A DNA stretch of 64,000 nt from Haplodiscus bocki (lineage: Eukaryota). Made by a program: the position numbers and the translations under genes. Each line of letters starts with the position of its first letter. Positions within the stretch are counted from its first letter, which is position 1. Positions 10,753-61,987 of the stretch are shown piece after piece. The notes beneath the pieces are model-generated. The model saw only the letters and a program-made list of their open reading frames with translations, was not told the origin of the DNA and did not search any database. The stretch spans positions 129,642,001 to 129,706,000 of the forward strand of contig OZ296649.1 in assembly GCA_965655095.1 (NCBI GenBank), read 5' to 3'.

Positions 10753-10770
10753 ACTAGAAGACGTTACAAG

Positions 10771-11130
10771 ATGATTGCTTTAAGGCAAATGGAAAATCAA
10801 TTCTATAGAGTTATTGGTCGACAACGTGGGCGTGAATTCGGTGCACTTGCACATTTTATTGAAAGAATCACAACTCGCGTTTTGGAAAAATATATCGTCC
10901 CAGCTGCAGAACGCGTGGGTGCTGACTTGTTTGAAATTGTTGTGCCGCAAATTGCAGAAGTTGATATTGGATAAAACAATTCCAGAACAGCTGCAAAAAG
11001 TGTGGAAGGACAAACCCTGAGAAAACAATTGAGTAGTGGCGGCAGGAACAGGACTGTATGCAGAGTCATTCCAACAAAGTCTGTAAAACATACCAGTGGG
11101 TCGCGGAGTTTACAAACATCTCTCAATATC
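10771..11130 (+). pseudogene. Small basic virion/core-like protein with QRGxxFG motif
   Basis: YRVIGRQRGREFGALAHFIERITTRVLEKYIVPAAERVGADLFEIVVPQIAEV..AAKSVEGQTLRKQLSSG. Lies between the minor and major capsid genes. Confidence 0.65.
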
Positions 11131-11882
11131 ATGCCCAATATTTTTCCGTTGCAACCTTTTGTCGCAGTTTCTGGAAATCTTGGTGGAAAAGCCCCAGTCG
11201 TGGACAATATCTTGCCGTCTGACGAACAAAAAAATTATCCTACTACTTTACTTGATGAAAAGTGCATATAGTTTGAAATTCAAACGGATCGCAACTATCA
11301 CGTTGATTTGAGACAGACGTATTTGGCTTTGAAACTGAAACTTGTCAAGAGTCGCGGTCACAAGACGCACAAAACCAAAGAAGTAAAAAAAGAGCACAAA
11401 GAAGAGGCCAAGCGGATGAGGAAATGGCGGCACAGGAGGATTGAGAGTCTCCATTTTCTTTCATTACTCATGTATCATGTAAACAACTTTTTGTGCGCAA
11501 TTTTTTCCAGTGTTGAGGTGTACGTCATCAATCAGAAGTTTTACAACTCCAATGGATTGTATGCACACAAGTCTTACATAGCCAACGACTTCAGTGAGGC
11601 CATCTCTGAATACAAGAGCGTTTTGAACAGCCAGGGATACGACCATGGAGAAATTCCTGATGAAATTTTGGTAGCGCCTTTTTATGAACCTTCTTTCGAA
11701 AGGAGAACAAAATTGCTTAGTGGACTCGATGGCTTCATGTTGTATGTTAAATTGGCAGTTGACTTTTTCTCCATTTCTGAAAGGGTATGTCCAAACACGA
11801 ATAAAAGGCTACGACTAATCAGAGCCAGACTTCAATTTTATGTGAATAGTGACAACCCCAACGTTAGTCTTGGAGTTGTCGT
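11130..11882 (+). pseudogene. MCP: Major capsid protein (double jelly-roll), 5' part; truncated by the satellite
   Basis: YPTTLLDEKCI*FEIQTDRNYHVDLRQTYLALKLKLVK...VNNFLCAIFSSVEVYVINQKFYNSNGLYAHKSYI...KLAVDFFS..RLRLIRAR...SDNPNVSLGV, then an abrupt switch to repeat sequence. Confidence 0.85.
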
Positions 11883-14800
11883 TCTTCACGTATTTGCTCC
11901 ATCCAAAATGTCGATGAAGCACAGGAAGATTTTCACCTAAACCAACTCTTCCACAATCGCAAAGCCTTTCGTACAAACACTGTGAAACTTTGTTGGGTCA
12001 GTGCATCCATTTTTCTATAGGAAGAAACTGAAGAGTTTTGATTTTTCAACTTCCAATCCGTAGAAACGAAGAGCAAGAGCTTCAAAAAGACATTTCTTGT
12101 CTTTGTACAGTTTTTTAATGTGTGTTCTTTGTAAGATAAACAGTTGACAGACATTCTGGCGTCCTATGGAAACATTTTTGAGTAGAGCAATGAAATCTCA
12201 TACTGGTGAGCTTGTAAAAATCAAATGGTTTTTGGCTGCGCATTTTCTTGAAAAAAGCCTCAAATAAATTCAATTGAATAATGTTGGGCTTTTCCGGATC
12301 GTTAAACTATTCAAAAGCGAAACTTTTTATCATCCTAAAGGTCCTGTAGCTTTTCAAGAAGGAAGGTGTGCTCGCAGTTCTTCCGAGAAACTTCAATAGG
12401 TCTACTATCCGAAAACCTTCGAATTTGAAAGAGACAATATGGTTCACCTTCTTGGTCATTACTTCTTCAATATCCCAATCGTTTATGTACATTAAGATCA
12501 AACAGCTCTGCATTTTTGTTGAGCTTCCCTTTGCGTATAGAAGTTATCAAGAACATAAACTAATGAATCTACCAAAACGTTTGGATTTGAGTTGCCGAGA
12601 AAAATTGGAGCTTTCATCAAGTTGGAGGAGGTTGTTACAACTACTGGTTTGTGCTTACCAATTCAAGGATGACGTCAAAATCAGGTTTTTCTTTTCTTTG
12701 CAGATGAATTGATTCAAGATCGAATAGTTTCAAGTTCTTGAAGAACATTTGATATTATGTGCACAGAAGATTTGATCCTATTTGTCAAGCAGGGTTTCCT
12801 GTATTTAATACAGGTTCACTGGGAAATTGTGGTAAACTCTTTCCTGGAAAATTTCAGGAGTCACTCCAGATTTAACTTTTTTGCTAAATTGATCGCACGA
12901 TGGACACCAATAAGCTTTTGAGAGTACATTGATATGGGACACATAGATAATGTGGTTTTTGTAACGCATTATTCGAACAGTTTGGAAAGTTTGCCAACAC
13001 TTTTCGTGGCTGGCTCTTCAGGATTTGCTCCATCCACAAAGTTGACGTCGAACAGGAAGATGTTCACATGAACCAATTCTTCCACTACCAAAAACTTTTT
13101 CAAACTAACACGGTCAAAGATTGTTGGGTCAGTTCATCCGGTTTTCTTCAGGAGGATCCTTAAGAGTTTTGAATTTTCAGATTTCAGTCCGTAGAACTGA
13201 AGAGCGAGAGTTCCAAACGGACATTTTCTGTCTTTGTACAGTTTTTTATTGTCTGTTTTTGTGAAATAAACGTTTGACAGACTGGTTATTGGTGAGGCAT
13301 CTTGGCATCCTTTGAACACGTCTTTGAGTTAAGCAACAAAATCTGATAGCAGTGAGCTCATGAAGTATAAGGGGTTTCTGGTTCCACAGTTGATTTAGAA
13401 AAAGCCTCAAATTGTTTCAATTGAGTGATTTTGGCCACTTCCGTGTCATTAAACTATCCATATCGGAAATTTTTTACCCTCTTAAACTTCCTGGAGGCTT
13501 TCAGGAATGAAGCTATGCTGACAGTTCTTCCGAGAAAATTCAGTAGGTCTATTAGCCAAAAATCTCCGAATTTGACGGAGACATTTTATTTCACATTTTT
13601 TATCGCTACTGTTCAATCTCTCGATCGTTACCGTATATTAGGATCAGACAGCTCATCATAAATTTGATGTCGTACTTCGCTCTTTCGAAACAAAAGACAT
13701 GAAGCTTTTTGCCAAATCTTTCTGAATGAATATGCAAACTGATATGGTGCAATAATCTTTTCAGAAACACTGGGTTTTGTTGATGTTCTTCGATACACTT
13801 GTCTTCAAGGTCCGTTGATCGTAGCAACAACAATATTGATTGAAAGATCATGAAAAAAGATCAACTTTGTTCTTTTTACTGGTCTCAATCTCCTAGGTTT
13901 TAAATTTTTGCTGAGCTTCCCTTTGTGTAAAGAAATTATTATGAACATAAACTCATGAATCTAGCAAAGCCTTTGGATTTGAGTTGCCGAGAAAAATTGG
14001 AGCTTTTATCAAGTTGGCGGAGGTTGTTACAACGACTGGTTTGTGCTTACCAATTCAGGGATGACATCAGTATCAGGTTTTACTTTTCTTTGCAGATGAA
14101 TTGATTGAAGATCGAATAATTTCAGGTTCTTGAAAAACTTTTGATATTATGTGCCCAGAATATTTGACCCTAATTGTCAAGCAGGGTTTCCTGAAGTTAA
14201 TACATGTTCACTGGGAAATTGTGGTAAACTCTTTCCTGAAACTTCTCAGGAGTTACTCCAGATTTAAGTTTCTTGCTAGATTGATCGAACGATGGGCAGA
14301 GATAAGCTTTTGAGAGTATCTTGATATGGGACACATAGAAAATGTGGTTTCTGTGACGCATTATTCGAACAGTTTGGAATGTTTGCCAACACTTTTCGTG
14401 GCTGGCTCTTCAGGATTTGCTCCATCCACAAAATCGACATTGCACAGGAAGATTTTCACGTAAACCAATTCTTCATCTACCGAAAAATCTTTCAAACAAA
14501 CACCATCAAAGTTTGTTGGGTCAGTTCATCCGGTTTTCTTCAGGAAGACCCTTAAGAGTTTTTAAATGTCAGTTTTCAGTCCGTAGAGTTGAAGAGCGAG
14601 AGTTCCAAACGGACAATTACTCTCTGTGTACAGTTCTTTGTAGTCTGTTTCTTGTAAATTAAACAACTGACAGACTTTTTATTCGTGAGGGATCTTCGCA
14701 TCCTTTGAAAACGTCTTTGAGTAAAGCAACAAAATCTGATTGCGCTGAATTCATAAAATGTAAGGGTTCTTTTGCTCCACAGTTGATTCACAAAAAGCCT

Positions 14801-17800
14801 CAAATTAATTCAATTGAGTAAGTTGGGTCTTTTCCGGGTTATTAAACTATCCATACGGAAGATACTTTATTCTCCTAAACGTCCTGGAGGCTTTCAGGAA
14901 TGAAGCTGTGCTGGCAGTTCTTCCGAAACCTTCAATAGGTCTATTAGCTGAAAATCTCCGAAGTTGTTGGAGACAATTTGTTTCTTACTTTTTATTGCTA
15001 CTGTTCAATCTCTCGATCGTTAACGTATATTAGGATCAGACAGCTCATCATAAATTTGATGTCGTACGTCGCTCTTTCGAAACAAAAGACATGAAGCTTT
15101 TTGCCAAATCATTCTGATTGAATATGCAAACTGATAATGTGTAATAGTCTTTTGAGAAACATTGCGTCTTGTTGATGTTTTTCGATACACTTGTCTTCAA
15201 GATCCATTGGTCGTCGCAACAACGCTATTGTTTGAGAGCTCATGAATAAAGATCGACTTTGTTCTTTTTACTGGTCTCAATCTCCTAGGTTTTAAATTTT
15301 TGCTGAGCTTCCCTTTGTGTAAACAAATTATTATGAACATAAACTCATGAATCTAGCAAAGCCTTCGGATTTGAGTTGCCGAGAAAAAATGGAGCTTTTA
15401 TCAAGTTGGCGGAGGTTGTTACAACAACTGGTTTGTGCCTACCAACTCAGGGATGACATCAGTATCAGGTTTTACTTTTCTTTGCAGATGAATTGATTGA
15501 AGATCGAATAATTTCAGGTTCTTGAAAAACTTTTGATATTATGTGCCCAGAATATTTGACCCTAATTGTCAAGCAGGGTTTCCTGAAGTTAATACAAATT
15601 CACTGGGAAGTTGTGGTAAACTCTTTCCTGAAACTTCTCAGGAGTTACTCCAGATTTAAGTTTCTTGCTAGATTGATCGAACGATGGGCAGAGATAAGCT
15701 TTTGAGAGTATCTTGATATGGGACACATAGAAAATGTGGTTTCTGTGACGCACTATTCGAACAGTTTGGAATGTTTGCCAACACTTTTCGTGGCTGGCTC
15801 TTCAGGATTTGCTCCATCCACAAAATGGACATTGCACAGGAAGATTTTCACATAAACCAATTCTTCCTCTACCGAAAAATCTTTCAAACAAACACCGTCA
15901 AAGTTTGTTGGGTCAGTTCATCCGGTTTTCTTCAGGAAGACTCTTAAGAGTTTTTAAATGTCAGATTTCAGTCCGTAGAGTTGAAGAGCGAGAGTTCCAA
16001 ACGGACAATTACTGTCTTTGTACAATTCTTTGTAGTCTGTTTCTTGTAAATTAAACAACTGACAGACTTTTTATTCGTGAGGGATCTTCTTATCCTTTGA
16101 AAACGTCTTTGAGTAAAGCAACAAAATCTGATTGCGCTGAATTCATAAAATGTAAGGGTTCTTTTGCTCCACAGTTGATTTACAAAAAGCCTCAAATTAA
16201 TTCAATTGAGTAAGTTGGGTCTTTTCCGGGTTATTAAACTATCCATATGGAAGATACTTTGTTCTCCTAAACGTCCTGGAGGCTTTCAGGAATGAAGCTG
16301 TGTTGGAAGTTCTTCCGAAAAATTTCAATAGGTCTATTAGCTGAAAATCTCCGAAAATGTTGGAGACAATTTGTTTCACATTTTTTATTGCTACTGTTCA
16401 ATCTCTCGATCGTTACCGTATATTAGGATCAGACAGCTCGTCATAAATTTAATGTCGTACGTCGCTCCTTCGAAACAAAAGACATGAAGCTTTTTGCCAA
16501 ATCATTCTGAATGAATATGCAAACTGATATTGTGTAATAGTCTTTTGAGAAACATTGCGTCTTGTTGATGTTTTTCGATACACTTGTCTTCAAGATCCAT
16601 TGGTCGTCGCAACAACGCTATTGTTTGAGAGCTCATGAATAAAGATCGACTTTGTTCTTTTTACTGGTGTCGATCTCCTAGGTTGTCGATTTTTGTTGAG
16701 CTTCGCTTTGTGTATAGAAATTATTAAGATGATAGAACTAATGAATCTACCGAAAACTTTGGATTTGAGTTGCCGAGAAAAAATGCAGCTTTCATCAAGT
16801 TGCAGGAGGTTGTTACAACGAATGGTTTGTGCTTACCAAGTCAGGGATGACGTCAGTATCAGGTTTTTCTTTTCTTTGCAGATGAATTGATTCAAGATCG
16901 AATAGTTTCAAGTTCTTGAAAAACATTTGATATTATGTGCACAGAAGATTTGATCCTATTTGTCAAGCAGGGTTTCCTGTATTTAATACAGGTTCACTGG
17001 GAAATTGTGGTAAACTCTTTCCTGGAAAATTTCAGGAGTCACTCCAGATTTAACTTTTTTGCTAAATTGATCGCACGATGGACACCAATAAGCTTTTGAG
17101 AGTACATTGATATGGGACAAGTAGATAATGTGGCTTTTGTAACGCATTATTCGAACAGTTTGGAAAACTTGCCAACATTTTTGGTGACTGGCTCTTCAGC
17201 ATTTGCTCCATCCACAAAATCGACGTCGCACAGGAAGATGTTCACTTAAACCAATTCTTCCAATACCGAAAAATCATTCAAACAAACACCGTCAAAATTT
17301 GTTGGGTCAGTTCATCCGTTTTTCTTCAGGAAGACCCTTAGAAGTTTTTAAATGTCAGATTTCAGTCCGTAGAGTTGAAGAGCAAGAGTTCCAAACGGAC
17401 AATTTTTGTCTTTGTACAGTTTTTTAAAGTCTGTTTCTTGTATATTAAACATCTGACAGACTTGTTATTCGTGAGGGATCTTCGCATCCTTTGAAAGCGT
17501 CTTGCAGTAAAGCAGCAAAATCTGATAGCGGTGAATTCATAAAATGTAAAGGTTCTTTTGTTCCACAGTTGATTTACAAAAAGCCTCAAAATAATTCAAT
17601 TGAGTAAGTTTGGTCTTTTCCGGGTTATTAAACTATCCAAATGGAAGATATTTTTTTCTCTTCAACGTCGTGGAGGCTTTCAGGAATGAAGCTATGCTGG
17701 CAGTTCTTCCGAGAAACTTCAATAGGTCTATTAGTTGAAAATCTCCGAAATTGTTGGAGACAATTTGTTTCACATCTTTTTTGCTACTGTTCAATCTCTC

Positions 17801-20800
17801 GATCGTTACCGTATATTAGGATCAGAGAGCTCATCATAAATTTGATGTCGTACTTCGTCCTTCGAAACAAAAGACATGAAGCTTTTTGCTGAATCATTCT
17901 GAATGAATATGCAAACTGATTTTGTGTAATAGTCTTTTGAGAAATATTGCGTCTTGTTGATGTTCTTCGATACACTTGTCTTCAAGATCCATTGATCGTC
18001 GCAACAACGCTATTGTTTGAGAGCTCAAGAATAAAGATCGACCTTGTTCTTTTTACTGGTGTCGATCTCCTAGGTTGTCGATTTTTGTTGAGCTTCGCTT
18101 TGTGTATAGAAATTATTAAGAACATAAACTAATGAATCTACCAAAAACTTTGGATTTGAGTTGCCGAGAAAAAATGCAGCTTTCATCAAGTTGCAGGAGG
18201 TTGTTACAACGAATGGTTTGTGCTTACCAAGTCAGGGATGACGTCAGTATCAGGTTTTTCTTTTCTTTGCAGATGAATTGATTCAAGATCGAAAAGTTTC
18301 AAGTTCTTGAAAAACATTTGATATTATGTGCACAGAAGATTTGATCCTATTTGTCAAGCAGGGTTTCCTGTATTTAATACAGGTTCACTGGGAAATTGTG
18401 GTAAACTCTTTCCTGGAAAATTTCAGGAGTCACTCCAGATTTAACTTTTTTGCTAAATTGATCGCACGATGGACACCAATAAGCTTTTGAGAGTACATTG
18501 ATATGGGACACATAGATAATGTGGTTTTTGTAACGCATTATTCGAACAGTTTGGAAAGTTTGCCAACACTTTTCGTGGCTGGCTCTTCAGGATTTGCTCC
18601 ATCCACAAAGTTGACGTCGAACAGGAAGATGTTCACATGAACCAATTCTTCCACTACCAAAAACTTTTTCAAACTAACACGGTCAAAGATTGTTGGGTCA
18701 GTTCATCCGGTTTTCTTCAGGAGGATCCTTAAGAGTTTTGAATTTTCAGATTTCAGTCCGTAGAACTGAAGAGCGAGAGTTCCAAACGGACATTTTCTGT
18801 CTTTGTACAGTTTTTTATTGTCTGTTTTTGTGAAATAAACGTTTGACAGACTGGTTATTGGTGAGGCATCTTGGCATCCTTTGAACACGTCTTTGAGTTA
18901 AGCAACAAAAACTGATAGCAGTAAGCTCATGAAGTATAAGGGGTTTCTGGTTCCACAGTTGATTTAGAAAAAGCCTCAAAATGTTTCAATTGAGTGATTT
19001 TGGCCACTTCCGTGTCATTAAACTATCCATATCGGAAATTTTTTACCCTTTTAAACGTCCTGGAGGCTTTCAGGAATGAAGCTATGCTGACAGTTCTTCC
19101 AAGAAAATTCAATAGGTCTATTAGCCAAAAATCTCCGAATTTGACGGAGACATTTTGTTTCACATTTTTTATCGCTACTGTTCAATCTCTCGATCGTTAC
19201 CGTATATTAGGATCAGACAGCTCATCATAAATTTGATGTCGTACTTCGCTCTTTCGAAACAAAAGACATGAAGCTTTTTGCCAAATCTTTCTGAATGAAT
19301 ATGCAAACTGATATAGTGCAATAGTCTTTTCAGAAACACTGGGTTTTGTTGATGTTCTTCGATACACTTGTCTTCAAGGTCCGTTGATCGTAGCAACAAC
19401 AATATTGATTGAGAGATCATGAAAAAAGATCAACTTTGTTGTTTTTACTGGTCTCAATCTCCAAGGTTTTAAATTTTTGCTGAGCTTCCCTTTGTGTAAA
19501 GAAATTATTATGAACATAAACTCATGAATCTAGCAAAGCCTTTGGATTTGAGTTGCCGAGAAAAATTGGAGCTTTTATCAAGTTGGCGGAGGTTGTTACA
19601 ACGACTGGTTTGTGCTTACCAATTCAGGGATGACATCAGTAACAGGTTTTACTTTTCTTTGCAGATGAATTGATTGAAGATCGAATAATTTCAGGTTCTT
19701 GAAAAACTTTTGATATTATGTGCCCAGAATATTTGACCCTAATTGTCAAGCAGGGTTTCCTGAAGTTAATACATGTTCACTGGGAAATTGTGGTAAACTC
19801 TTTCCTGAAACTTCTCAGGAGTTACTCCAGATTTAAGTTTCTTGCTAGATTGATCGAACGATGGGCAGAGATAAGCTTTTGAGAGTATCTTGATATGGGA
19901 CACATAGAAAATGTGGTTTCTGTGACGCATTATTCGAACAGTTTGGAATGTTTGCCAACACTTTTCGTGGCTGGCTCTTCAGGATTTGCTCCATCCACAA
20001 AATCGACATTGCACAGGAAGATTTTCACGTAAACCAATTCTTCCTCTACCGAAAAATCTTTCAAACAAACACCATCAAAGTTTGTTGGTTCAATTCATCC
20101 GGTTTTCTTCAGGAAGACCCTTAAGACTTTTTAAATGTCAGTTTTCAGTCCGTAGAGTTGAAGAGCGAGAGTTCTAAACGGACAATTACTGTCTTTGTAC
20201 AGTTCTTTGTAGTCTGTTTCTTGTAAATTAAACCACTGACAGACTTTTTATTCGTGAGGGATCTTCGCATCCTTTGAAAACGTTTTTGAGTAAAGCAACA
20301 AAATCTGATTGCGCTGAATTCATAAAATGTAAGGGTTCTTTTGCTCCACAGTTGATTTACAAAAAGCCTCAAATTAATTCAATTGAGTAAGTTGGGTCTT
20401 TTCCGGGTTATTAAACTATCCATATGGAAGATACTTTATTCTCCTAAACGTCCTGGAGGCTTTCAGGAATGAAGCTGTGCTGGCAGTTCTTCCGAAAAAC
20501 TTCAATATGTCTATTAACTGAAAATCTCCGAAGTTGTTGGAGACAATTTGTTTCTTACTTTTTATTGCTACTGTTCAATCTCTCGATCGTTACCGTATAT
20601 TAGGATCAGACAGCTCATCATAAATTTGATGTCGTACGTCGCTCTTTCGAAACAAAAGACATGAAGCTTTTTGCCAAATCGTTCTGAATGAATATGCAAA
20701 CTGATATTGTGTAATAGTCTTTTGAGAAACATTGCGTCTTGTTGATGTTTTTCGATACACTTGTCTTCAAGATCCATTGATCATCGCAACAACGCTATTG

Positions 20801-23800
20801 TTTGAGAGCTCAAGAATAAAGATCGACCTTGTTCTTTTTACTGGTGTCGATCTCCTAGGTTGTCGATTTTTGTTGAGCTTCCCTTTGTGTATAGAAATTA
20901 TTAGGATGATAAAACTAATGAATCTACCAAAAACTTTGGATTTGAGTTGCCGAGAAAAATTGGAGCTTTCATCAAGTTGGAGGAGGTTGTTACAACGACT
21001 GGTTTGTGCTTACCAACTCAGGGATGACATCAGTATCAGGTTTTACTTTTCTTTGCAGATGAATTGATTGAAGATCGAATAATTTCAGGTTCTTGAAAAA
21101 CTTTTGATATTATGTGCCCAGAATATTTGACCCTAATTGTCAAGCAGGGTTTCCTGAAGTTAATACATGTTCACTGGGAAATTGTGGTAAACTCTTTCCT
21201 GAAACTTCTCAGGAGTTACTCCAGATTTAAGTTTCTTGCTAGATTGATCGAACGATGGGCAGAGATAAGCTTTTGAGAGTATCTTCATATGGGACACATA
21301 GAAAATGTGGTTTCTGTGACGCATTATTCGAACAGTTTGGAATGTTTGCCAACACTTTTCGTGGCTGGCTCTTCAGGATTTGCTCCATCCACAAAATCGA
21401 CATTGCACAGGAAGATTTTCACGTAAACCAATTCTTCCTCTACCGAAAAATCTTTCAAACAAACACCATCAAAGTTTGTTGGTTCAATTCATCCGGTTTT
21501 CTTCAGGAAGACCCTTAAGACTTTTTAAATGTCAGTTTTCAGTCCGTAGAGTTGAAGAGCGAGAGTTCTAAACGGACAATTACTGTCTTTGTACAGTTCT
21601 TTGTAGTCTGTTTCTTGTAAATTAAACCACTGACAGACTTTTTATTCGTGAGGGATCTTCGCATCCTTTGAAAACGTTTTTGAGTAAAGCAACAAAATCT
21701 GATTGCGCTGAATTCATAAAATGTAAGGGTTCTTTTGCTCCACAGTTGATTTACAAAAAGCCTCAAATTAATTCAATTGAGTAAGTTGGGTCTTTTCCGG
21801 GTTATTAAACTATCCATATGGAAGATACTTTATTCTCCTAAACGTCCTGGAGGCTTTCAGGAATGAAGCTGTGCTGGCAGTTCTTCCGAAAAACTTCAAT
21901 ATGTCTATTAACTGAAAATCTCCGAAGTTGTTGGAGACAATTTGTTTCTTACTTTTTATTGCTACTGTTCAATCTCTCGATCGTTACCGTATATTAGGAT
22001 CAGACAGCTCATCATAAATTTGATGTCGTACGTCGCTCTTTCGAAACAAAAGACATGAAGCTTTTTGCCAAATCGTTCTGAATGAATATGCAAACTGATA
22101 TTGTGTAATAGTCTTTTGAGAAACATTGCGTCTTGTTGATGTTTTTCGATACACTTGTCTTCAAGATCCATTGATCATCGCAACAACGCTATTGTTTGAG
22201 AGCTCAAGAATAAAGATCGACCTTGTTCTTTTTACTGGTGTCGATCTCCTAGGTTTTCGATTTTTGTTGAGCTTCCCTTTGTGTATAGAAATTATTAGGA
22301 TGATAAAACTAATGAATCTACCAAAAACTTTGGATTTGAGTTGCCGAGAAAAATTGGAGCTTTCATCAAGTTGGAGGATGTTGTTACAACGACTGGTTTG
22401 TGCTTACCAACTCAGGGATGACATCAGTATCAGGTTTTAGTTTTCTTTGCAGATGAATTGATTGAAGATCGAATAATTTCAGGTTCTTGAAAAACTTTTG
22501 ATATTATGTGCCCAGAATATTTGACCCTAATTGTCAAGCAGGGTTTCCTGAAGTTAATACATGTTCACTGGGAAATTGTGGTAAACTCTTTCCTGAAACT
22601 TCTCAGGAGTTACTCCAGATTTAAGTTTCTTGCTAGATTGATCGAACGATGGGCAGAGATAAGCTTTTGAGAGTATCTTGATATGGGACACATAGAAAAT
22701 GTGGTTTCTGTGACGCATTATTCGAACAGTTTGGAATGTTTGCCAACACTTTTCGTGGCTGGCTCTTCAGGATTTGCTCCATCCACAAAATCGACATTGC
22801 ACGGGAAGATTTTCACATAAACCAATTCTTCCTCTACCGAAAAATCTTTCAAACAAACACCGTCAAAGTTTGTTGGGTCAGTTCATCCGGTTTTCTTCAG
22901 GAAGACCCTTAAGAGTTTTTAAATGTCAGATTTCAGTCCGTAGAGTTGAAGAGCGACAGTTCCAAACGGACAGTTACTGTCTTTGTACAATTCTTTGTAG
23001 TCTGTTTCTTGTAAAATAAACAACTGACAGACTTTTTATTCGTGAGGGATCTTCGCATCCTTTGATAACGTCTTTGAGTAAAGCAACAAAATCTGATTGC
23101 GCTGAATTCATAAAATGTAAGGGTTCTTTTGATCCACAGTTGATTTACAAAAAGCCTCAAATTAATTCAATTGAGTAAGTTGGGTCTTTTCCGGGTTATT
23201 AAACTATCCATATGGAAGATAATTTATTCTCCTAAACGTCCTGGAGGCTTTCAGGAATGAAGCTGTGCTGGAAGTTCTCCCGAAAAACTTCAATAGGTCT
23301 ATTAGCTGAAAATCTCCGAAAATGTTGGAGACAATTTGTTTCACATTTTTTCTTGCTACATTTCAATCTCTCGATCGTTACCGTATATTAGGATCAGACA
23401 GCTCGTCATAAATTTGATGTCGTACGTCGCTCTTTCGAAACAAAAGACATGAAGCTTTTTGCCAATTCATTCTGAATGAATATGCAAACTGATATTGTGT
23501 AATAGTCTTTTGAGAAACATTGCGTCTTGTTGATGTTTTTCGATACACTTGTCTTCAAGATCCATTGATCGTAGCAACAACAATATTGATTGAGAGATCA
23601 TGAAAAAAGACCAACTTTGTTGTTTTTACTGGTCTCAATCTCCAAGGTTTTAAATTTTTGCTGAGCTTCCCTTTGTGTAAAGAAATTATTATGAACATAA
23701 ACTCATGAATCTAGCAAAGCCTTTGGATTTGAGTTGCCGAGAAAAATTGGAGCTTTTATCAAGTTGGCGGAGGCTGTTACAACGACTGGTTTGTGCTTAC

Positions 23801-35800: not shown

Positions 35801-38800
35801 TGCTGACAGTTCTTCCAAGAAAATTCAGTAGGTCTATTAGCCAAAAATCTCCGAATTTGACGGAGACATTTTGTTTCACATTTTTTATCGCTACTGTTCA
35901 ATCTCTCGATCGTTACCGTATATTAGGATCAGACAGCTCATCATAAACTTGATGTCGTACTTCGCTCTTTCGAAACAAAAGACATGAAGCTTTTTGCCAA
36001 ATCTTTCTGAATGAATATGCAAACTGATATGGTGCAATAATCTTTTCAGAAACACTGGGTTTTGTTGATGTTCTTCGATACACTTGTCTTCAAGGTCCGT
36101 TGATCGTAGCAACAACAATATTGATTGAGAGATCATGAAAAAAGATCAACTTTGTTCTTTTTACTGGTCTCAATCTCCTAGGTTTTAAATTTTTGCTGAG
36201 CTTCCCTTTGTGTAAAAAATTATTATGAACATAAACTCATGAATCTAGCAAAGCCTTTGGATTTGAGTTGCCGAGAAAAATTGGAGCTTTCATCAAGTTG
36301 GAGGAGGTTGTTACAACGACTGGTTTGTGCTTACCAACTCAGGGATGACATCAGTATCAGGTTTTACTTTTCTTTGCAGATGAATTGATTGAAGATCGAA
36401 TATTTTCAGGTTCTTGAAAAACTTTTGATATTATGTGCCCAGAATATTTGACCCTAATTGTCAAGCAGGGTTTCCTGAAGTTAATACATGTTCACTGGGA
36501 AATTGTGGTAAACTCTTTCCTGAAACTTCTCAGGAGTTACTCCAGATTTAAGTTTCTTGCTAGATTGATCGAACGATGGGCAGAGATAAGCTTTTGAGAG
36601 TATCCTGATATGGGACACATAGAAAATGTGGTTTCTGTGACGCATTATTCGAACAGTTTGGAATGTTTGCCAACACTTTTCGTGGCTGGCTCTTCAGGAT
36701 TTGCTCCATCCACAAAATCGACATTGCACAGGAAGATTTTCACGTAAACCAATTCTTCCTCTACCGAAAAATCTTTCAAACAAACACCATCAAAGTTTGT
36801 TGGGTCAGTTCATCCGGTTTTCTTCAGGAAGACCCTTAAGAGTTTTTAAGTGTCAGTTTTCAGTCCGTAGAGTTGAAGAGCGAGAGTTCCAAACGGACAA
36901 TTACTGTCTTTGTACAGTTCTTTGTAGTCTGTTTCTTGTAAATTAAACAACTGACAGACTTTTTATTCGTGAGGGATCTTCTCATCCTTTGAAAACGTCT
37001 TTGAGTAAAGCAACAAAATCTGATTGCGCTGAATTCATAAAATGTAAGGGTTCTTTTGCTCCACAGTTGATTTACAAAAAGCCTCAAATTAATTCAATTG
37101 AGTAAGTTGGGTCTTTTCCGGGTTATTAAACTATCCATATGGAAGATACTTTATTCTCCTAAACGTCCTGGAGGCTTTCAGGAATGAAGCTGTGCTGGCA
37201 GTTCTTCCGAAAAACTTCAATAGGTCTATTAACTGAAAATCTCCGAAGTTGTTGGAGACAATTTGTTTCTTACTTTTTATTGCTACTGTTCAATCTCTCG
37301 ATCGTTACCGTATATTAGGATCAGACAGCTCATCATAAATTTGATGTCGTACGTCGTTCTTTCGAAACAAAAGACATGAATTTTTTTGCCAAATCATTCT
37401 GAATGAATATGCAAACTGATATTGTGTAATAGTCTTTTGAGAAACATTGCGTCTTGTTGATGTTTTTCGATACACTTGTCTTCAAGATCCATTGGTCGTC
37501 GCAACAACGCTATTGTTTGAGAGCTCATGAATAAAGATCGACTTTGTTCCTTTTACTGGTCTCAATCTCCTAGGTTTTAATTTTTTGCTGAGCTTCCCTT
37601 TGTGTAAAGAAATTATTATGAACATAAACTCATGAATCTAGCAAAGCCTTTGGATTTGAGTTGCCGAGAAAAATTGGAGCTGTCATCAAGTTGGAGGAGG
37701 TTGTTACAACGACTGGTTTGTGCTTACCAACTCAGGGATTGCATCAGTATCAGGTTTTACTTTTCTTTGCAGATGAATTGATTGAAGATCGAATAATTTC
37801 AGGTTCTTGAAAAACTTTTGATATTATGTGCCCAGAATATTTGACCCTAATTGTCAAGCAGGGTTTCCTGAAGTTAATACAGGTTCACTGGGAAATTGTG
37901 GTAAACTCTTTCCTGAAACTTCTCAGGAGTTACTCCAGATTTAAGTTCCTTGCTAGATTGATCGAACGATGGGCAGAGATAAGCTTTTGAGAGTATCTTG
38001 ATATGGGACACATAGAAAATGTGGTTTCTGTGACGCATTATTCGAACGGTTTGGAATGTTTGCCAACACTTTTCGTGGCTGGCTCTTCAGGATTTGCTCC
38101 ATCCACAAAATCGACATTGCACAGGAAGATTTTCACATAAACCAATTCTTCCTCTACCAAAAAATCTTTCAAACAAACACCGTCAAAGTTTGTTGGGTCA
38201 GTTCATCCGGTTTTCTTCAGGAAGACCCTTAAGAGTTTTTAAATGTCAGATTGCAGTCCGTAGAGTTGAAGAGCGAGAGTTCCAAACGGACAATTACTGT
38301 CTTTGTACAATTCTTTGTAGTCTGTTTCTTGTAAATTAAACAACTGCTAGACTTTTTATTCGTGAGGGATCTTCGCATCCCTTGAAAACGTCTTTGAGTA
38401 AAGCAACAAAATCTGATTGCGCTGAATTCATAAAATGTAAGGGTTCTTTTGCTCCACAGTTGATTTACAAAAAGCCTCAAATTAATTCAATTGAGTAAGT
38501 TGGGTCTTTTCCGGGTTTTTAAACTATCCACATGGAAGATACTTTGTTCTCCTAAACGTCCTGGAGGCTTTCAGGAATGAAGCTGTGCTGGAAGGTCTTC
38601 CGAAAAACTTCAATAGGTCTATTAGCTGAAAATCTCCGAAAATGTTGGAGACAATTTGTTTCACCTTTTTTATTGCTACTGTTCAATCTCTCGATCGTTA
38701 CCGTATATTAGGATCAGACAGCTCGTCATAAATTTGATGTCGTACGTCGCTCTTTCGAAACAAAAGACATGAAGCTTTTTGCCAAATCATTCTGAATGAA

Positions 38801-41800
38801 TATGCAAACTGATATTGTGTAATAGTCTTTTGAGAAACATTGCGTCTTGTTGATGTTTTTCGATACACTTGTCTTCAAGATCCATTGGTCTTCGCAACAA
38901 CGCTATTGTTTGAGAGCTCATGAATAAAGATCGACTTTGTTCTTCTTACTGGTGTCGATCTCCTAGATTGTCGATTTTTGTTGAGCTTCGCTTTGTGTAT
39001 AGAAATTATTAAGATGATAAAACTAATGAATCTACCGAAAACTTTGGATTTGAGTTGCCGAGAAAAAGTGCAGCTTTCATCAAGTTGCAGGAGGTTGTTA
39101 CAACGAATGGTTTGTGCTTACCAAGTCAGGGATGACGTCAGTATCAGGTTTTTCTTTTCTTTGCAGATGAATTGATTCAAGATCGAATAATTTCAAGTTC
39201 TTGAAAAACATTTGATATTATGTGCACAGAAGATTTGATCCTATTTGTCAAGCAGGGTTTCTTGTATTTAATACAGGTTCACTGGTAAATTGTGGTAAAC
39301 TCTTTCCTGGAAATTTTCAGGAGTCACTCCAGATTGAACTTTTTTGCTAAATTGATCGCACGATGGACACCAATAAGCTTTTGAGAGTACATTGATATGG
39401 GACAAGTAGATAATGTGGTTTTTGTAACGCATTATTCGAACAGTTTGGAACGCTTGCCAACACTTTTCGTGACTGACTCTTCAGCATTTGCTCCATCCAC
39501 AAAATCGACGTCGCACAGGAAGATGTTCACTTAAACCAATTCTTCCAATACCGAAAAATCATTCAAACAAACACCGTCAAAATTTGTTGGGTCAGTTCAT
39601 CCGTTTTTGTTCAGGAAGACCCTTAGAAGTTTTTAAATGTCAGATTTCAGTCCGTAGAGTTGAAGAGCAAGAGTTCCAAACGGACAATTTACGTCTTTGT
39701 ACAGTTTTTTAAAGTCTGTTTCTTGTATATTAAACATCTGACAGACTTGTTATTCGTGAGGGATCTTCGCATCCTTTGAAAGCGTCTTGGAGTAAAGCAA
39801 CAAAATCTGATAGCGGTGAATTCATTAAATGTAAGGGTTCTTTTGTTCCACAGTTGATTTACAAAAAGCCTCAAAATAATTCAATTGAGTAAGTTTGGTC
39901 TTTTCCGGGTTATTAAACTATCCAAATGGAAGATACTTTATTCTCCTAAACGTCCTGGAGGCTTTCAGGAATGAAGCTGTGCTGGCAGTTCTTCCGAAAA
40001 ACTTCAATAGGCCTATTAGCTGAAATTCTCCGAAAATGTTGGAGACAATTTGTTTCACCTTTTTTATTGCTACTGTTCAATCTCTCGATCGTTACCGTAT
40101 ATTAGGATCAGACAGCTCGTCATAAATTTGATGTCGTACGTCGCTCTTTCGAAACAAAAGACATGAAGCTTTTTGCCAAATCATTCTGAATGAATATGCA
40201 AACTGATATTGTGTAATAGTCTTTTGAGAAACATTGCGTCTTGTTGATGTTTTTCGATACACTTGTCTTCAAGATCCATTGGTCTTCGCAACAACGCTAT
40301 TGTTTGAGAGCTCATGAATAAAGATCGACTTTGTTCTTCTTACTGGTGTCGATCTCCTAGATTGTCGATTTTTGTTGAGCTTCGCTTTGTGTATAGAAAT
40401 TATTAAGATGATAAAACTAATGAATCTACCGAAAACTTTGGATTTGAGTTGCCGAGAAAAATTGCAGCTTTCATCAAGGTGCAGGAGGTTGTTACAACGA
40501 CTGGTTTGTGCTTACCAAGTCAGGGATGACATCAGTATCAGGCTTTTCTTTCCTTTGCAGATGAATTGATTCAAGATCGAATACTTTCAGGTTCTTCAAA
40601 AACTTTTGATATTATGTACACAGACTATTTGATCCTATTTGTCAAGCAGGGTTTCCTCTGGTTGATACACGTTCACTGGGACACTGGGAAAATGTGGTAT
40701 ACTTTTTCCTGAAACTTTTCAGGTGTCACTCCAGATTTAACTTTTTTGCTAAATTGATCGCACGATGGACAGCGATAAGCTTTTGAGAGTACATTGATAT
40801 GGGACAAGTAGATAATGTGGTTTCTGTAACGCATTATTCGAACAGTTTGGAAAGCTTGCCAACACTTTTCGTGACTGGCTCTTCAGCATTTGCTCCATCC
40901 ACAAAGTTGACGTCGCACAGGAAGATGTTCACATGAACCAATTCTTCCACTACCAGAAATTTTTTCAAACTAACACGGTCAAAATTTGTTGGGTCATTTC
41001 ATCCGGTTTTCTTCAGGAAAACTCTTAAGAGTTTTGAATTTTCAGATTTCAGTCCGTAGAATTGAAGAGCGAGAGTTCCAAACGGACATTTTTTGTCTTT
41101 GTACAGTTTTTTAAAGTCTGTTTCTTGTAAATTAAACATCTAACAGACTTGTTATTCGTGAGGGATCGTCGCATCCTTTGAAAGCGTCTTGGAGTAAAGC
41201 AACAAAATCTGATAGCGGTGAATTCATAAAATGTAAAGGTTCTTTTGTTCCACAGTTGATTTACAAAAAGCCTCAAAATAATTCAATTGAGTAAGTTTGG
41301 TCTTTTCCGGGTTATTAAACTATCCAAATGGAAGATATGTTTTTCTCTTCAACGTCGTGGAGGCTTTCAGGAATGAAGCTATGCTGGCAGTTCTTCCGAG
41401 AAATTTCAATAGGTCTATTATTTGAAAATCTCCGAAATTGTTGGAGACAATTTGTTTCACATCTTTTTTGCTACTGTTCAATCTCTCGATCGTTACCCTA
41501 TATTAGGATCAGAGAGCTCATCATAAATTTGATGTCGTACTTCGTTCTTTCGAAACAAAAGACATGAAGCTTTTCGCTAAATCATTCTGAATGAATATGC
41601 AAACTGATATTGTGTAATAGTCTTTTGAGAAACATTGCGTCTTGTTGATGTACTTCGATACACTTGTCTTCAAGATCCATTGGTCGTCGCAACAACGCTA
41701 TTGTTTGAGTGCTCATGATTAAAGATCGACTTTGTTCTTTTTACTGGTGTCGATCTCCTAGGTTGTCAATTTTTGTTGAGCTTCGCTTTGTGTATAGAAA

Positions 41801-44800
41801 TTATTAAGATGATAAAACTAATGAATCTACCAAAAACTTTGGATTTGAGTTGCCGAGAAAAGTTGCAGCTTTCATCAAGTTGCAGGAGGTTTTTACAGCG
41901 AATGGTTTGTGCTTACCAAGTCAGGGATGACGTCAGTATCAGGTTTTTCTTTTCTTTGCAGATGAATTGATTCAAGATCGAATAATTTCAAGTTCTTGAA
42001 AAACATTTGATATTATGTGCACAGAAGATTTGATCCTATTTGTCAAGCAGGGTTTCTTGTATTTAATACAGGTTCACTGGTAAATTGTGGTAAACTCTTT
42101 CCTGGAAATTTTCAGGAGTCACTCCAGATTTAACTTTTTTGCTAAATTGATCGCACGATGGACACCAATAAGCTTTTGAGAGTACATTGATATGGGACAA
42201 GTAGATAATGTGGTTTTTGTAACGCATTATTCGAACAGTTTGGAACGCTTGCCAACACTTTTCGTGACTGACTCTTCAGCATTTGCTCCATCCACAAAAT
42301 CGACGTCGCACAGGAAGATGTTCACTTAAACCAATTCTTCCAATACCGAAAAATCATTCAAACAAACACCGTCAAAATTTGTTGGGTCAGTTCATCCGTT
42401 TTTCTTCAGGAAGACCCTTAGAAGTTTTTACATGTCAGATTCCAGTCCGTAGAGTTGAAGAGCAAGAGTTCCAAACGGACAATTTTTGTCTTTGTACAGT
42501 TTTTTAAAGTCTGTTTCTTGTATATTAAACATCTGACAGACTTGTTATTCGTGAGGGATCTTCGCATCCTTTGAAAGCGTCTTGGAGTAAAGCAATAAAA
42601 TCTGATAGCGGTGAATTCATAAAATGTAAGGGTTATTTTGTTCCACAGTTGATTTACAAAAAGCCTCAAATTAATTCAATTGAGTAAGTTGGGTCTTTTC
42701 CGGGTTATTAAACTATCCATACGGAAGATACTTTATTCTCCTAAACGTCCTGGAGGCTTTCAGGAATGAAGCTATGCTGGCAGTTCTTCCGAGAAACTTC
42801 AATAGGTCTATTAGTTGAAAATCTCCGATTTTGATGGAGACAAGTTGTTTCACATTTTTTATCGCTTTTGTTCAATCTCTCGATCGTTACCGTATATTAG
42901 GATAAGAGAGCTCATCATAAATTTGATGTCGTACTTCGTTCTTTCGAAACAAAAGACATGAAGCTTTTTGCTAAATCATTCTGAATGAATATGCAAACTG
43001 ATATTGTGTAATAGTCTTTTGAGAAACATTGCGTCTTGTTGATGTTCTTCGATACACTTGTCTTCAAGATCCATTGGTCGTCGCAACAACGCTTTTGTTT
43101 GAGAGCTCATGATTAAAGATCGACTTTGTTCTTTTTACTGGTGTCGATCGCCTAGGTTGTCGATTTTTGTTGAGCTTCGCTTTGTGTATAGAAATTATTA
43201 AGAGCATAAACTAATGAATCTACCAAAAACTTTGGATTTGAGTTGCCGAGAAAAATTGCAGCTTTCATCAAGTTGCAGGAGGTTGTTACAACGACTGGTT
43301 TGTGCTAACCAAGTCAGGGATGACATCAGTATCAGGTTTTTCTTTCCTTTGCAGATGAATTGATTCAAGATCGAATAATTTCAGGTTCTTGAAAAACTTT
43401 TGATATTATGTACACAGACTATTTGATCCTATTTGTCAAGCAGGGTTTCCTCTGGTTGATACACGTTCACTGGGACACTGGGAAAATGTGGTATACTTTT
43501 TCCTGAAATTTTTCAGGTGTCACTCCAGATTTACCTTTTTTGCTAAATTGATCGCACGATGGACAGCAATAAGCTTTTGAGAGTACATTGATATGGGACA
43601 AGTAGATAATGTGGTTTTTGTAACGCATTATTCGAACAGTTTGGAAAGTTTGCCAACACTTTTCGTGACTGGCTCTTCAGCATTTGCTCCATCCACAAAG
43701 TTGACGTCGCACAGGAAGATGTTCACATGAACCATTTCTTCCACTACCAAAAATTTTTTCAAACTAACACGGTCAAAATTTGTTGGGTCATTTCATCCGG
43801 TTTTCTTCAGGAAAACTCTTAAGAGTTTTGAATTTTCAAATTTCAGTCCGTAGAATTGAAGAGCGAGAGTTACATACGGACAATTTTTGTCTTTGTACAG
43901 TTTTTTAAAGTCTGTTTCTCGTAAATTAAACGTCTGACAGACTTGTTATTCGTGAGGGATCGTCGCATCCTTTGAATACGTCTTTGAGTAAAGCAATAAA
44001 GTCTGATAGCGGTGAGTTCATAAAATGTAAGGGTTATTTTGTTCCACAGTTGATTTACAAAAAGCCTCAAATTAATTCAATTGAGTAAGTTTGGTCTTTT
44101 CCGGGTTATTAAACTATCCATATGGAAAATATTTTATTCACCTAAACGTTGTGGAGGCTTTCAGGAAGGAAGATAAGCTGGCAATTCTTCCGACAAACTT
44201 CAGTAGGTCTATTAACTGAAAATCTCCGATTTTGATGGCGACAATTTGTTTCTTACTTTTTATTGCTACTGTTCAATCTCTCGATCGTTACCGTTTATTA
44301 GGATCAGACAGCTCATCATGATTTTGATGTCGTACAAGAAAACGACAAAACATTCAAAACAAAAGCCATGAAGTTTTTTGCCAACTCTTTCTGATTGAAT
44401 ATACAAACTGATATGGTGTAATAGTCTTTTCAGAAACACTGCGTCTTGTTGATGTTCTTCGATACACTTGTTTTCAAGATCCGTTGGTAGTCGCAACAAT
44501 GCTATTGTTTGAGAGCTCATGAATAAAGATCAAATTTGTTCTTTTTACTGGTCTCAATCTCCTAGGTTTTCGATTTTTGTTGAGCTTCGCTTTGTCGCTT
44601 TGTGTAAAGAAGTTATCAAGAACATAAACTAATGAATCTACCAAAACCTTTGGAGTTGAGTTGCCGAGAAAAATTGGAGCTTTCATCAAGTTGCAGGAGG
44701 TTGTTACAACGACTGGTTTGTGCTTACCCATTCACGTGACGACATAAGTATCATGATATTCTTTTCGTTGCAGATGAATTGATGGAAAATCGAATTTTTT

Positions 44801-46590
44801 CAGTTTCTTGAAGAGCTTTTGATACTATGTGCACTGAACTTTTGATCTTAATTTTCAAGCACGGTTTCCTGTAGTTATTACAAGTTTATTGGGAATTTGT
44901 TGTAAACTCACTCCTGAAAAATTGTCAGGTGTTAGTTCTGATTTCTGTTTTTTCATGAATTGATCATTTGATGAGCAGTGTTAAGCTTTTGAGAGTACAC
45001 TGATGTGGGACACATCGAAAATGTAGTTTTTGTGACGCATTATTCGAACAGTTTGGAATGTTTGCCAACACTCTTCATTGCTGGCTCTTCAGGATTTGCT
45101 GCATCCACAAAGTCGAATTCGCACAGGAAGATGTTCACTTAAACCAGGTTTTCCACAACCAGAAAAGTTTTCATACAAACACCGTGAAAGTTTGTTGGGT
45201 CAGTTTTTCCACTTTTCCTCAGGAAAGTACTGAAGAGTTTTGAATTTTCAACTTTCAATCCATAGAAGTGAAAAGCGAGAGCTCCAGAGAGACGACTTTC
45301 GTCTTTGTGCAGTTTTTTAATGTGTGTTCTTGGAAAGACAAGGAGTTGACAGACTGGTTATTCGTGAGTCTTTTTGGCATCCTATGAAAACGTATTTGAG
45401 TAGAGCAACAAATTATGATACCGGCCAATATAATTTTTAAGGGCTTTTTGGTTTCGCAATTTGTTTTAATAAAACCTTCAAATGTTTTAATTGAGTTATC
45501 TTGGGCTTTTCCAGGTCATTGAACTATCCAAATGGAAATTGCTTCATCGTCCTATACCTCTTGTAGGCTTTCAGGAATGAAGCTATTCTCGCAATTTTTC
45601 GAAAAATTTCAGTAGGTCTTGTAGCTGAAAATCTCCTAATTTGAAAGAGACAGTTTGGTTCACTTTGTTCATCATTACTAGCGAAATCTCTTGATCATTC
45701 ATGTATGATAGGATCAGATAGATCCTCATATACCTGATGTCGTACATTGCTCTTTCGAAACATAAACATGAAGCACAGTGCAATATTTTTTCGAATGGGG
45801 TTGTAAACTGGTATGATGACACAATCCATTTGCAGACAATGCGCCTTGTTGATCGTGTTTGAAACACTTGTCTTCAAGATTCATCAGTCTCCAAAGTTTT
45901 CCATTTTCGCTGAGCTTCGCTGTGTGTATATAAATCATCAAGAACATAAGCTAATGAATCAAGCAAAACCCTTGGATTTGAGTTGCGTAGCAAAACTGGA
46001 CCCTTTATCAAGTTGGAGGAGATTGTTACAGATACTGCTTCCGGCGTAGCGATTCGTGTGATGCTATCAAAAACAAGATTTTCTTTCCTTCGCAGATGAT
46101 ATGAATAAAGATCGAATTTTTTCAGGTTCTTGAAAAGCTTTTGATATTATGTAAACAGCATCCTTGATCGTAATTGTCAAGCAACTTTTCTTGTACTTAA
46201 TACACGTTCATTCGGAATTGGTGGTAATTTTTGCTCTGAAAAAATGTCAAGTGTCACTCCAGATTCAACTTTTTTGATGAAATGATCGCACGATGGACAA
46301 CGATAGGTTTTGGAGAGTAGTCTTTCATACAAGCACTGTGAAGTCTTGTTGGGTATGTTTCTCCAATTTTCTGTAAGAAGACACTGAGTAAATTGGAATC
46401 TTCCTTTTTCAATCCGTAGAAATAGGAGCGAGAGCTACAAAGCGACAATTTTAGTCTTTTGTATTGTTTTTAGTTGATTATTTTTAAGACAAACAGTTGA
46501 CAGATTGGTATATGGTGACCGATTTTGGCAACCAGTGAAAACATTTCCGGGTAGAGCAACAAAATTTAATACCGATGAGCTCGGAAAAGA
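11882..46590 (-). repeat. Macrosatellite: ~25 head-to-tail copies of a ~1,393-bp unit derived from an internal pPolB fragment
   Basis: Anchor TTGCTCCATCCA at ~11894, 13025, 14417, 15809, 17203, 18595, 19986, 21380 ... 42283, 43684, ~45095. Spacing is mostly 1391-1394 bp. The minus strand gives pPolB-like GKHKPVVVTTS.NL.KAPIFLGNS, AKYDIK, LLKFLGRTAS..SFLK, LYKD..CPFGTLAL, homologous to 1-830. Confidence 0.97.
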
Positions 46591-48119: not shown

Positions 48120-48170
48120 TAATACCTGCTTGGTTAAAAAAACGTTACGAGTGTTGCCATCGCTGAAAAC
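48120..48170. promoter_or_regulatory. Second copy of the conserved non-coding block
   Basis: TTGGTT..AGTGTTGCCATCGCTGAAA matches 2200-2251. Confidence 0.4.
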
Positions 48171-49450: not shown

Positions 49451-49559
49451 TCTCTATGCCGTACCTCATTTCGTCAAAACACTCATCTAAAATGTTGCCT
49501 TTCCTCATACTCTTTATCAACACGAATCAAAAACAGGTGAAGCATAAGGAATTCTAGTT

Positions 49560-49785: not shown

Positions 49786-49819
49786 CCAAGTTCAACTATG
49801 AAAACTGCGGAAGATATCG

Positions 49820-54420: not shown

Positions 54421-54435
54421 AAAAGGCGTTACAGG

Positions 54436-61610: not shown

Positions 61611-61625
61611 AAAAGGCGTTCCAGG

Positions 61626-61960: not shown

Positions 61961-61987
61961 GCGGTCCTGTCATTCCGGAGTAATTTT

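What the first reader, a model, noticed from the sequence alone, without database searches (positions are those of the whole stretch)
11882..46590. 35-kb macrosatellite built from a viral-type DNA polymerase exonuclease fragment
Seen: ~25 tandem copies of ~1,393 bp. Each reads on the minus strand as one contiguous pPolB segment (from the ..LLK....C region through ExoI, ExoII AKYD and the FPY region), then jumps back at a shared junction (..TCATAAAATG|TAAGGG.., e.g. ~14760). Stops and frameshifts are shared by the core copies and most unit lengths are not multiples of 3, so dead coding DNA was amplified. Established: TE-derived satellites exist, but usually come from LTRs, UTRs or termini. Inference: a Polinton-polymerase-derived macrosatellite that may act as centromeric/heterochromatic DNA or as an amplified small-RNA template against active Polintons.
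Basis: partly seen in the sequence, partly recalled or inferred. Interest (0 to 1): 0.88.

Follow-up and report, generated by a model that had tools for sequence, protein, structure and literature searches.

The report
Tandem array from dead Polinton polymerase
A 35-kb run of about 25 head-to-tail copies of a 1.39-kb piece of a long-dead, virus-like transposon's DNA polymerase gene grew on the spot inside that transposon; this is an ordinary way for satellite DNA to arise, and nothing here shows a function.

Summary
Window 11883-46590 is a tandem array with period 1391-1394 bp, about 24.9 unit equivalents. Full units are 87-100% identical and both edges are degraded.

Each unit, read on the minus strand from junction to junction, is collinear with residues about 1-466 of protein-primed B-family DNA polymerase relatives (Pfam PF03175). 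It runs through ExoII and the PYE region and stops there. No polymerase domain occurs anywhere in the window. Every unit is dead, with 7-13 stops and 2-6 frame changes, mostly shared.

New context: the window holds two collinear, same-orientation copies of an element carrying this polymerase plus an rve integrase, so it is Polinton/Maverick-like. The array is the polymerase 5' end of one copy. Its right end keeps the native upstream flank, which argues for amplification in place followed by unequal exchange.

The centromere and small-RNA ideas are untested. The array shares no exact match longer than 12 nt with the neighbouring copy.

Satellites derived from transposon coding sequence, including one from a Polinton, are already described. 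I rate this a new member of a known kind, of moderate to low interest.

The parts
11883..46590 (-). Tandem array of about 24.9 units of 1391-1394 bp. Each unit is a dead copy of the first ~466 codons of a protein-primed B-family DNA polymerase gene, belonging to element copy R.
   Evidence: Per unit there are 7-13 stops and 2-6 frame changes, and 28-39% identity to P0193.
21724..23117 (-). One example unit, junction to junction. It is collinear with P0193 residues 4-466.
44715..46590 (-). Right-edge units, the first on the minus strand. They are the most divergent (68-80% to the core) and closer to relatives than core units (about 40% identity). The array ends exactly at a unit start.
11883..12644 (-). 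Left-edge partial unit. It is degraded, has an internal deletion, and is cut mid-unit about 118 codons into the segment, where it abuts copy L.
46591..62715 (.). Native upstream region of element copy R. It is collinear with copy L positions 838-11880 and is enlarged by internal duplications.
59505..60709 (+). rve integrase remnant of copy R, broken (up to 4 stops and 1 frame change in the detectable part). A partial duplicate lies at 53247-53555.
1..837 (-). Copy L: a solitary N-terminal polymerase fragment (P0193 residues 3-271, 47% identity, E 8e-63). It is broken (4 stops, 1 frame change) and runs off the window start.
838..11880 (.). Copy L: the region upstream of the polymerase gene. It is collinear with 46591-62715, and no recognisable capsid-module genes were found.
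9003..9863 (+). Copy L: rve integrase core (62% identity to P0258, E 2e-85). It is nearly open, with 1-2 stops.

Best explanation
A Polinton/Maverick-like element (copy R, carrying a protein-primed polymerase plus an rve integrase) inserted here and decayed. After it was already riddled with stops and frameshifts, a 1393-bp segment was duplicated in place. The segment runs from about 6-10 bp upstream of the N-terminus seen in the longest relative to about codon 466, just past the ExoII and PYE region. Repeated unequal exchange or replication slippage then expanded it to about 25 copies, in blocks of 1 to 16 units.

The array now evolves neutrally by concerted evolution. The core is homogenised, and the two edges are older and more ancestral. 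On this reading it has no function of its own. It is a by-product of a duplication-prone, repeat-rich neighbourhood.

Shown: the array, its homology, its phase, the native right flank, the shared breaks, the neutral pattern and the block duplications. Inferred: the order of events, the exchange mechanism and the absence of function.
For: Homology chain.
- An array piece hits P0002-P0011.
- P0007 has more than 2600 relatives.
- Relatives extending C-terminally carry PF03175, both precomputed and rescored above the gathering score: P0227 at 45 bits, P0146 and P0234 at 34.8, P0176 at 26.9.
- Those same proteins hit the array at E 6e-15 to 2e-19.
- Each unit covers P0193 residues about 1-466. KYD lies at residue 374 and PYE at 445, and no HSP spans a junction.

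Origin in place.
- The array's right end (46590) is a unit start.
- The flank beyond it is homologous to the sequence upstream of the solitary polymerase fragment of copy L: 63.6% over 110 ungapped columns, then collinear blocks for about 11 kb.

Dead before amplification.
- 27 stop sites are shared by at least 19 of 23 full units.
- Most are also present in the edge copies: 10 of 11, 19 of 25 and 6 of 11.

Neutral drift.
- Variable sites among units show no codon-position bias (117/97/97, p = 0.28).
- No conserved ORF or Pfam hit exists on either strand.

Unequal exchange.
- Units fall into subfamilies, with a 4-unit block repeated at lag 16 (96-98%) and pairs at lags 3, 4 and 13.
- In 37 of the 57 columns where both edges differ from the uniform core, the two edges agree with each other.

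Duplication-prone neighbourhood.
- There is a 6.2-kb direct duplication, a 984-bp tandem and a 90-bp tandem nearby.
Against: - No piece of a unit hits PF03175 directly, so polymerase identity rests on a two-step chain through unnamed database proteins.
- The downstream partner of the array, the rest of the polymerase gene, is missing. The left end is cut mid-unit against copy L, so the original duplication breakpoints cannot be fully read.
- Absence of function is an inference from sequence only.
- An identical 69-aa array ORF is recorded on a different 14,576-bp contig. The repeat therefore exists at one more place at least, and its genomic extent is unknown.
Confidence: 0.75

Rival explanations
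1. The array is a small-RNA (piRNA/siRNA) source locus that silences related Polinton-like elements.
For: It lies in a nest of degenerate, same-orientation element copies, the kind of place where such clusters are found. This part rests on established knowledge, not on a test made here. The many copies would raise template dosage.
Against: Units are 28-39% identical at protein level to sampled relatives. They share no exact match longer than 12 nt with the neighbouring copy L, the same as with unrelated DNA, so guides made here could not pair with that lineage. The units lack the native upstream region, and there are no expression data.
Confidence: 0.1
2. The array is a centromeric or otherwise structural heterochromatin satellite.
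For: It is a tandem array with a homogenised core and divergent edges, like many centromeric arrays. TE-derived centromeric satellites are known (PMC7004042, PMC9659126).
Against: It is only about 35 kb and is bounded on both sides inside one window by non-satellite DNA. The flank ORFs of the window lie on a 776,855-bp contig. There are no chromatin data.
Confidence: 0.05
3. The array was made elsewhere, by rolling-circle copying of an excised circle, and was then inserted here.
For: Rolling-circle models exist for tandem arrays of truncated transposons (PMC12628747). The left end of the array is cut at an arbitrary phase.
Against: The right end is exactly at a unit start and continues into the element's native upstream sequence, as shown by collinearity with copy L. 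That is expected for growth in place and not for an inserted concatemer.
Confidence: 0.06
4. The array is an assembly artefact (over-expanded or mis-joined repeats).
For: Long tandem repeats are hard to assemble. The same ORF also occurs on a separate 14.6-kb contig, which could be an unplaced piece of the same array.
Against: Units differ by 0-13% in a structured way, with subfamilies, multi-unit blocks and graded edges, which artefactual copies would not show.
Confidence: 0.04

Closest known systems
TE-derived satellite DNA from coding regions (LINE ORF2, gag, CACTA transposase; LmiSat34-299 of Locusta migratoria, homologous to a Polinton CDS)
   Same: A dead internal coding piece of a mobile element is turned into a head-to-tail array (PMC9659126, PMC12628747, PMC4935994).
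   Different: The unit here is much longer (1393 bp against 299 bp for the locust case). It covers one defined gene segment, the N-terminus to just past ExoII/PYE. The birth locus is preserved, with the native flank and a non-amplified paralogous copy in the same window.
Polinton/Maverick elements
   Same: A protein-primed B-family polymerase and an rve integrase occur in one roughly 12+ kb unit, present twice in the window. The defining pair and size range are as described in PMC10748475.
   Different: Both copies are dead and incomplete in the window. No capsid, ATPase or protease genes, TIRs or TSDs could be shown.
Satellite growth by unequal exchange after a first duplication (the model of McGurk and Barbash, PMC5932611)
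   Same: A tandem TE-derived dimer acts as seed and expands by unequal exchange. Multi-unit block duplications and older edges are seen here.
   Different: That model starts from a double insertion of whole elements at one site. Here the unit is an internal fragment, so the seed was a local duplication and not a double insertion.

Membership tests
Protein-primed B-family DNA polymerase (Pfam PF03175, DNA_pol_B_2) | Significant sequence similarity to family members | tested here: met
   Relatives that pass the PF03175 gathering score hit the array at E 6e-15 to 2e-19, on the minus strand only, against at most 30 bits in shuffles. Direct Pfam scans of single unit pieces found nothing.
Protein-primed B-family DNA polymerase (Pfam PF03175, DNA_pol_B_2) | Exonuclease motifs in collinear order (ExoII KYD, then the PYE region) | tested here: met
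   The unit covers P0193 residues 1-466, with KYD at 374 and PYE at 445. The KYD reading is seen in subfamily A units. The ExoI assignment is my reading only.
Protein-primed B-family DNA polymerase (Pfam PF03175, DNA_pol_B_2) | Polymerase (palm/fingers/thumb) domain | tested here: not met
   Nothing in the window matches residues beyond 471 of P0193 or beyond 59 of P0227.
Protein-primed B-family DNA polymerase (Pfam PF03175, DNA_pol_B_2) | Open reading frame | tested here: not met
   There are 7-13 stops and 2-6 frame changes per unit.
Polinton/Maverick | pPolB and rve integrase in one element | tested here: met
   Copy L has the polymerase at 1-837 (-) and the integrase at 9003-9863 (+). Copy R has the array and an integrase remnant at 59505-60709. 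Integrase relatives pass the rve gathering score.
Polinton/Maverick | Capsid module (major and minor capsid proteins, packaging ATPase, maturation protease) | tested here: inconclusive
   There were no Pfam or PHROGs hits among the 65 flank ORFs of at least 70 aa or among the 10 longest ORFs of copy L. The copies are decayed and the libraries are poor for these proteins.
Polinton/Maverick | Terminal inverted repeats and 5-8 bp target-site duplication | not testable with these tools
   One end of each copy lies outside the window or is replaced by the array. No inverted repeats were found in the flanks.
Satellite DNA / macrosatellite | Head-to-tail units of constant period with concerted evolution | tested here: met
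Satellite DNA / macrosatellite | Abundance at genome scale and heterochromatic location | not testable with these tools
   The only hint is that an identical array ORF occurs on another 14,576-bp contig.
Centromeric satellite | Association with centromeric histone | not testable with these tools
   No chromatin data are available.
Small-RNA source locus against related elements | Near-perfect complementarity to target elements | tested here: not met
   The longest exact match to the neighbouring copy L is 12 nt, equal to background. Other genomic copies could not be examined.

The most novel reading that the evidence does not exclude
The array is not a neutral by-product. One possibility is that it is a selected small-RNA or chromatin-organising locus. 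Another is that both ends of the same dead element were amplified (1.39 kb x25 at the polymerase end, 6.2 kb x at least 1.6 at the integrase end) because elements of this kind have an amplification route of their own.
Probability: 0.07. Interest if true: 0.7.

Novelty: new member of a known kind. Interest (0 to 1): 0.33.

Why it matters
The window catches a transposon-derived macrosatellite at its birthplace. The first unit still sits in its native flank, and a non-amplified paralogous copy 45 kb away serves as an outgroup. The order of events (death of the gene, local duplication, block-wise expansion, homogenisation of the core) can therefore be read from one sequence.

There is also a practical point. 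Arrays like this inflate counts of Polinton polymerase genes and seed databases with many short fragment 'proteins'.

It does not open a new question unless expression or chromatin data show a function.

Tried and rejected
- **TRF**: blind to a 1.39-kb period, so I replaced it with a k-mer and blastn self-comparison.
- **Pfam on seven minus-strand unit pieces and three flank ORFs**: no relevant hit. The pieces are too short and too decayed.
- **P0001**, the best hit of the representative search: an unrelated 59-aa-repeat protein with spurious summed scores. Rejected.
- **Profile of 26 relatives against PDB sequences**: no hit.
- **AlphaFold model of P0133 with that alignment**: mean pLDDT 34. 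It is unusable, so I ran no fold search.
- **Pfam on 65 flank ORFs and PHROGs on 10 ORFs of copy L**: nothing.
- **Plus-strand ORFs of the array**: no Pfam hit, and they are not conserved among units.
- **Rfam and tRNA scans**: empty.
- **Cluster look-ups**: no names or accessions, so the host stays unidentified. CpG observed/expected of about 0.8 argues against a heavily CpG-methylated genome such as a vertebrate's.
- **Whether copy L is a younger nested insertion or an old segmental duplicate of R**: unresolved. The integrase is better kept in L (62% against 36-48%), but the density of breaks in the polymerase fragment of L is similar to that of R's edge unit.
Full report
**Observation.** The window has no N, about 37% G+C, and no ORF longer than 210 aa. 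A k-mer offset histogram shows a dominant period of 1393 bp (also 1392 and 1394) and multiples of it, confined to about 12.5-45.3 kb. blastn of one unit against the window resolves 23 full units (12646-44713, 87-100% identical to the reference unit). It also resolves one nearly full degraded unit (44715-46030) and partial remnants at both ends. Together these span 11883-46590, or 24.9 unit equivalents. 13 of 17 junction-to-junction lengths are not multiples of three.

**What the unit is.** Single stop-free pieces of a unit gave no Pfam hit.
- A 94-aa piece from the divergent right-edge unit, searched against 1.84 billion representatives, found ten short unnamed proteins from eukaryote-size contigs (E 1e-6 to 7e-4). 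It also found one spurious repetitive protein.
- One of the ten, P0007, has more than 2600 relatives.
- Searching with the C-terminal part of P0033 reached relatives that carry PF03175, 'DNA polymerase type B, organellar and viral'.
- Rescoring confirmed PF03175 above the gathering score for P0227, P0146, P0234 and P0176, and below it for N-terminal fragments.
- Local tblastn of these proteins against the array gives hits on the minus strand only. The best single HSP is 92.8 bits (E 1.5e-25), against at most 30 bits in shuffled arrays.
- Between consecutive junctions every unit maps collinearly to residues about 1/4-466 of P0193 (615 aa), using all three frames. No HSP crosses a junction.
- In P0193 the ExoII KYD lies at residue 374 and the PYE motif at 445.
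- Nothing in the window matches the polymerase domain proper.

**State of the copies.** Against P0193 each unit shows 7-13 in-frame stops, 2-6 frame changes and 28-39% identity. 27 stop sites are shared by at least 19 of 23 full units. Most are also present in the divergent edge copies: 10 of 11, 19 of 25 and 6 of 11 alignable sites. The DNA was therefore already dead when the oldest surviving units separated. Variation among units shows no codon-position bias (117/97/97 variable columns, p = 0.28). No ORF is conserved across units on either strand, and plus-strand ORFs have no Pfam hit.

**Array dynamics.**
- Units fall into a homogenised core, a subfamily A (units 1, 5 and 17, with 14 intermediate) and a subfamily C (units 4 and 20-22).
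- A four-unit block recurs at lag 16 (96-98%), and pairs recur at lags 3, 4 and 13.
- In 57 columns both edge copies differ from an otherwise uniform core, against about 16 expected if the edges varied independently. In 37 of those the two edges agree with each other.
- The edges therefore keep older states, and the core descends from a later ancestor. This is the classical picture of unequal exchange with concerted evolution.

The strongest polymerase match in the window lies outside the array, at 4-820 on the minus strand (P0193 residues 3-271, 47% identity, E 8e-63). It runs off the window start.
- The DNA upstream of that fragment (838-11880) is collinear, block after block, with the DNA to the right of the array (46591-62715) at about 63-82% identity.
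- An alignment across the boundary puts the unit start at 46590 in the right copy and at 837 in the left copy. Identity over the 110 ungapped columns upstream is 63.6%.
- The window thus holds two same-orientation copies, L and R, of one kind of element. The array is the polymerase 5' end of copy R, still attached to its native upstream flank.
- An ORF at 9196-9579 (+) that gave only a faint rve hit has more than 1000 relatives at 58-68% identity carrying PF00665. Several of these pass the rve gathering score.
- With those proteins the integrase spans 9003-9863 in L (E 2e-85) and 59505-60709 in R. The R copy is decayed, and a partial duplicate lies at 53247-53555.
- Polymerase plus rve integrase is the defining pair of Polintons/Mavericks (PMC10748475).
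- Capsid-module genes were not detected, and the ends could not be examined.
- Four contig lengths recur between the polymerase and integrase hit lists, one of them only 21,685 bp. This is weak circumstantial support that the two genes travel together.

**Mechanism.** Because the right end of the array is a unit start in native context, growth in place is favoured over insertion of a concatemer made elsewhere. The left end is cut about 118 codons into a unit and abuts the integrase-side end of copy L within about 5 bp. Either L inserted into the array, or a rearrangement joined them. The integrase of L is better kept than that of R, but break densities in the polymerase fragments are similar, so I leave this open. 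The same neighbourhood carries a 6.2-kb direct duplication (53206-57787 and 60379-64000), a 984-bp tandem inside it and a 90-bp tandem. That fits a duplication-prone region.

**Function.** Nothing in the sequence points to one. The longest exact match between the array and the polymerase fragment of copy L is 12 nt, no more than with unrelated DNA. Small RNAs from the array could therefore not guide silencing of that lineage. Other genomic copies could not be checked. An identical 69-aa array ORF is recorded on a different 14,576-bp contig, while flank ORFs lie on a 776,855-bp contig. At least one more place, or an unplaced piece or haplotig, therefore holds the repeat.

**Comparison with what is known.** Reviews list satellites derived from TE ORFs (PMC9659126, PMC12628747). 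The locust satellitome includes a 299-bp satellite homologous to a Polinton CDS (PMC4935994). Expansion from a tandem seed by unequal exchange is the model of PMC5932611. This case is a new member of that kind. It is notable for its long unit, its defined gene segment and its preserved birthplace.

**Limits, and rules kept.**
- Consensus lines printed by the alignment tools were not used.
- Queries were single-frame pieces or database proteins as returned.
- I did not fetch DNA around relatives' genes, beyond the window on its own contig, or from the 14.6-kb contig. Such a look-up might bring in a virus-like element of an animal. These steps are referred.

- One search printed coordinates of stop-bounded pieces of the left flank, before I recognised that flank as part of element copy L.
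- In my working reasoning I once inferred the place of a stop in the integrase from an ORF end given by the ORF listing.

No part of the window looked human. The host remains unidentified.

Noticed in passing
window 1-837 (-): A second, non-amplified N-terminal polymerase fragment, and the strongest polymerase match in the window (E 8e-63). It runs off the window start. Whether it is itself the first unit of another array cannot be seen.
   Followed up: partly
window 9003-9863 (+); 59505-60709 (+); 53247-53555 (+): rve integrase core. It is well kept in copy L (62% identity to relatives) and decayed in copy R, where it is partly duplicated.
   Followed up: yes
window 53206-57787 and 60379-64000: A 6.2-kb direct duplication (87-89% identity) of the integrase-side end of copy R, plus about 1.3 kb beyond the point where copy L stops. 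It runs off the window end and may be a second, larger-unit tandem repeat.
   Followed up: partly
window 54653-56622: A 984-bp tandem duplication (96.7% identity) inside the 6.2-kb repeat.
   Followed up: no
window 2734-2914; 4737-4948: Short tandem repeats in copy L: 90 bp x2 at 95%, and a roughly 58-bp repeat at 75%.
   Followed up: no
array ORFs 20571-20777 (-) and 21965-22171 (-): This exact 69-aa ORF is recorded in the protein collection on a 14,576-bp contig together with a variant at least 90% identical. Flank ORFs are recorded on a 776,855-bp contig.
   Followed up: partly
relatives P0133, P0073, P0048 (residues about 65-86), a region covered by the unit: A C2H2-zinc-finger-like stretch N-terminal to the exonuclease region. 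It scores below Pfam's threshold (about 20 bits against 25.2).
   Followed up: no
whole window: CpG observed/expected is about 0.8 in both the array and the flanks. There is no strong CpG depletion, which argues against a vertebrate-type methylated genome.
   Followed up: no
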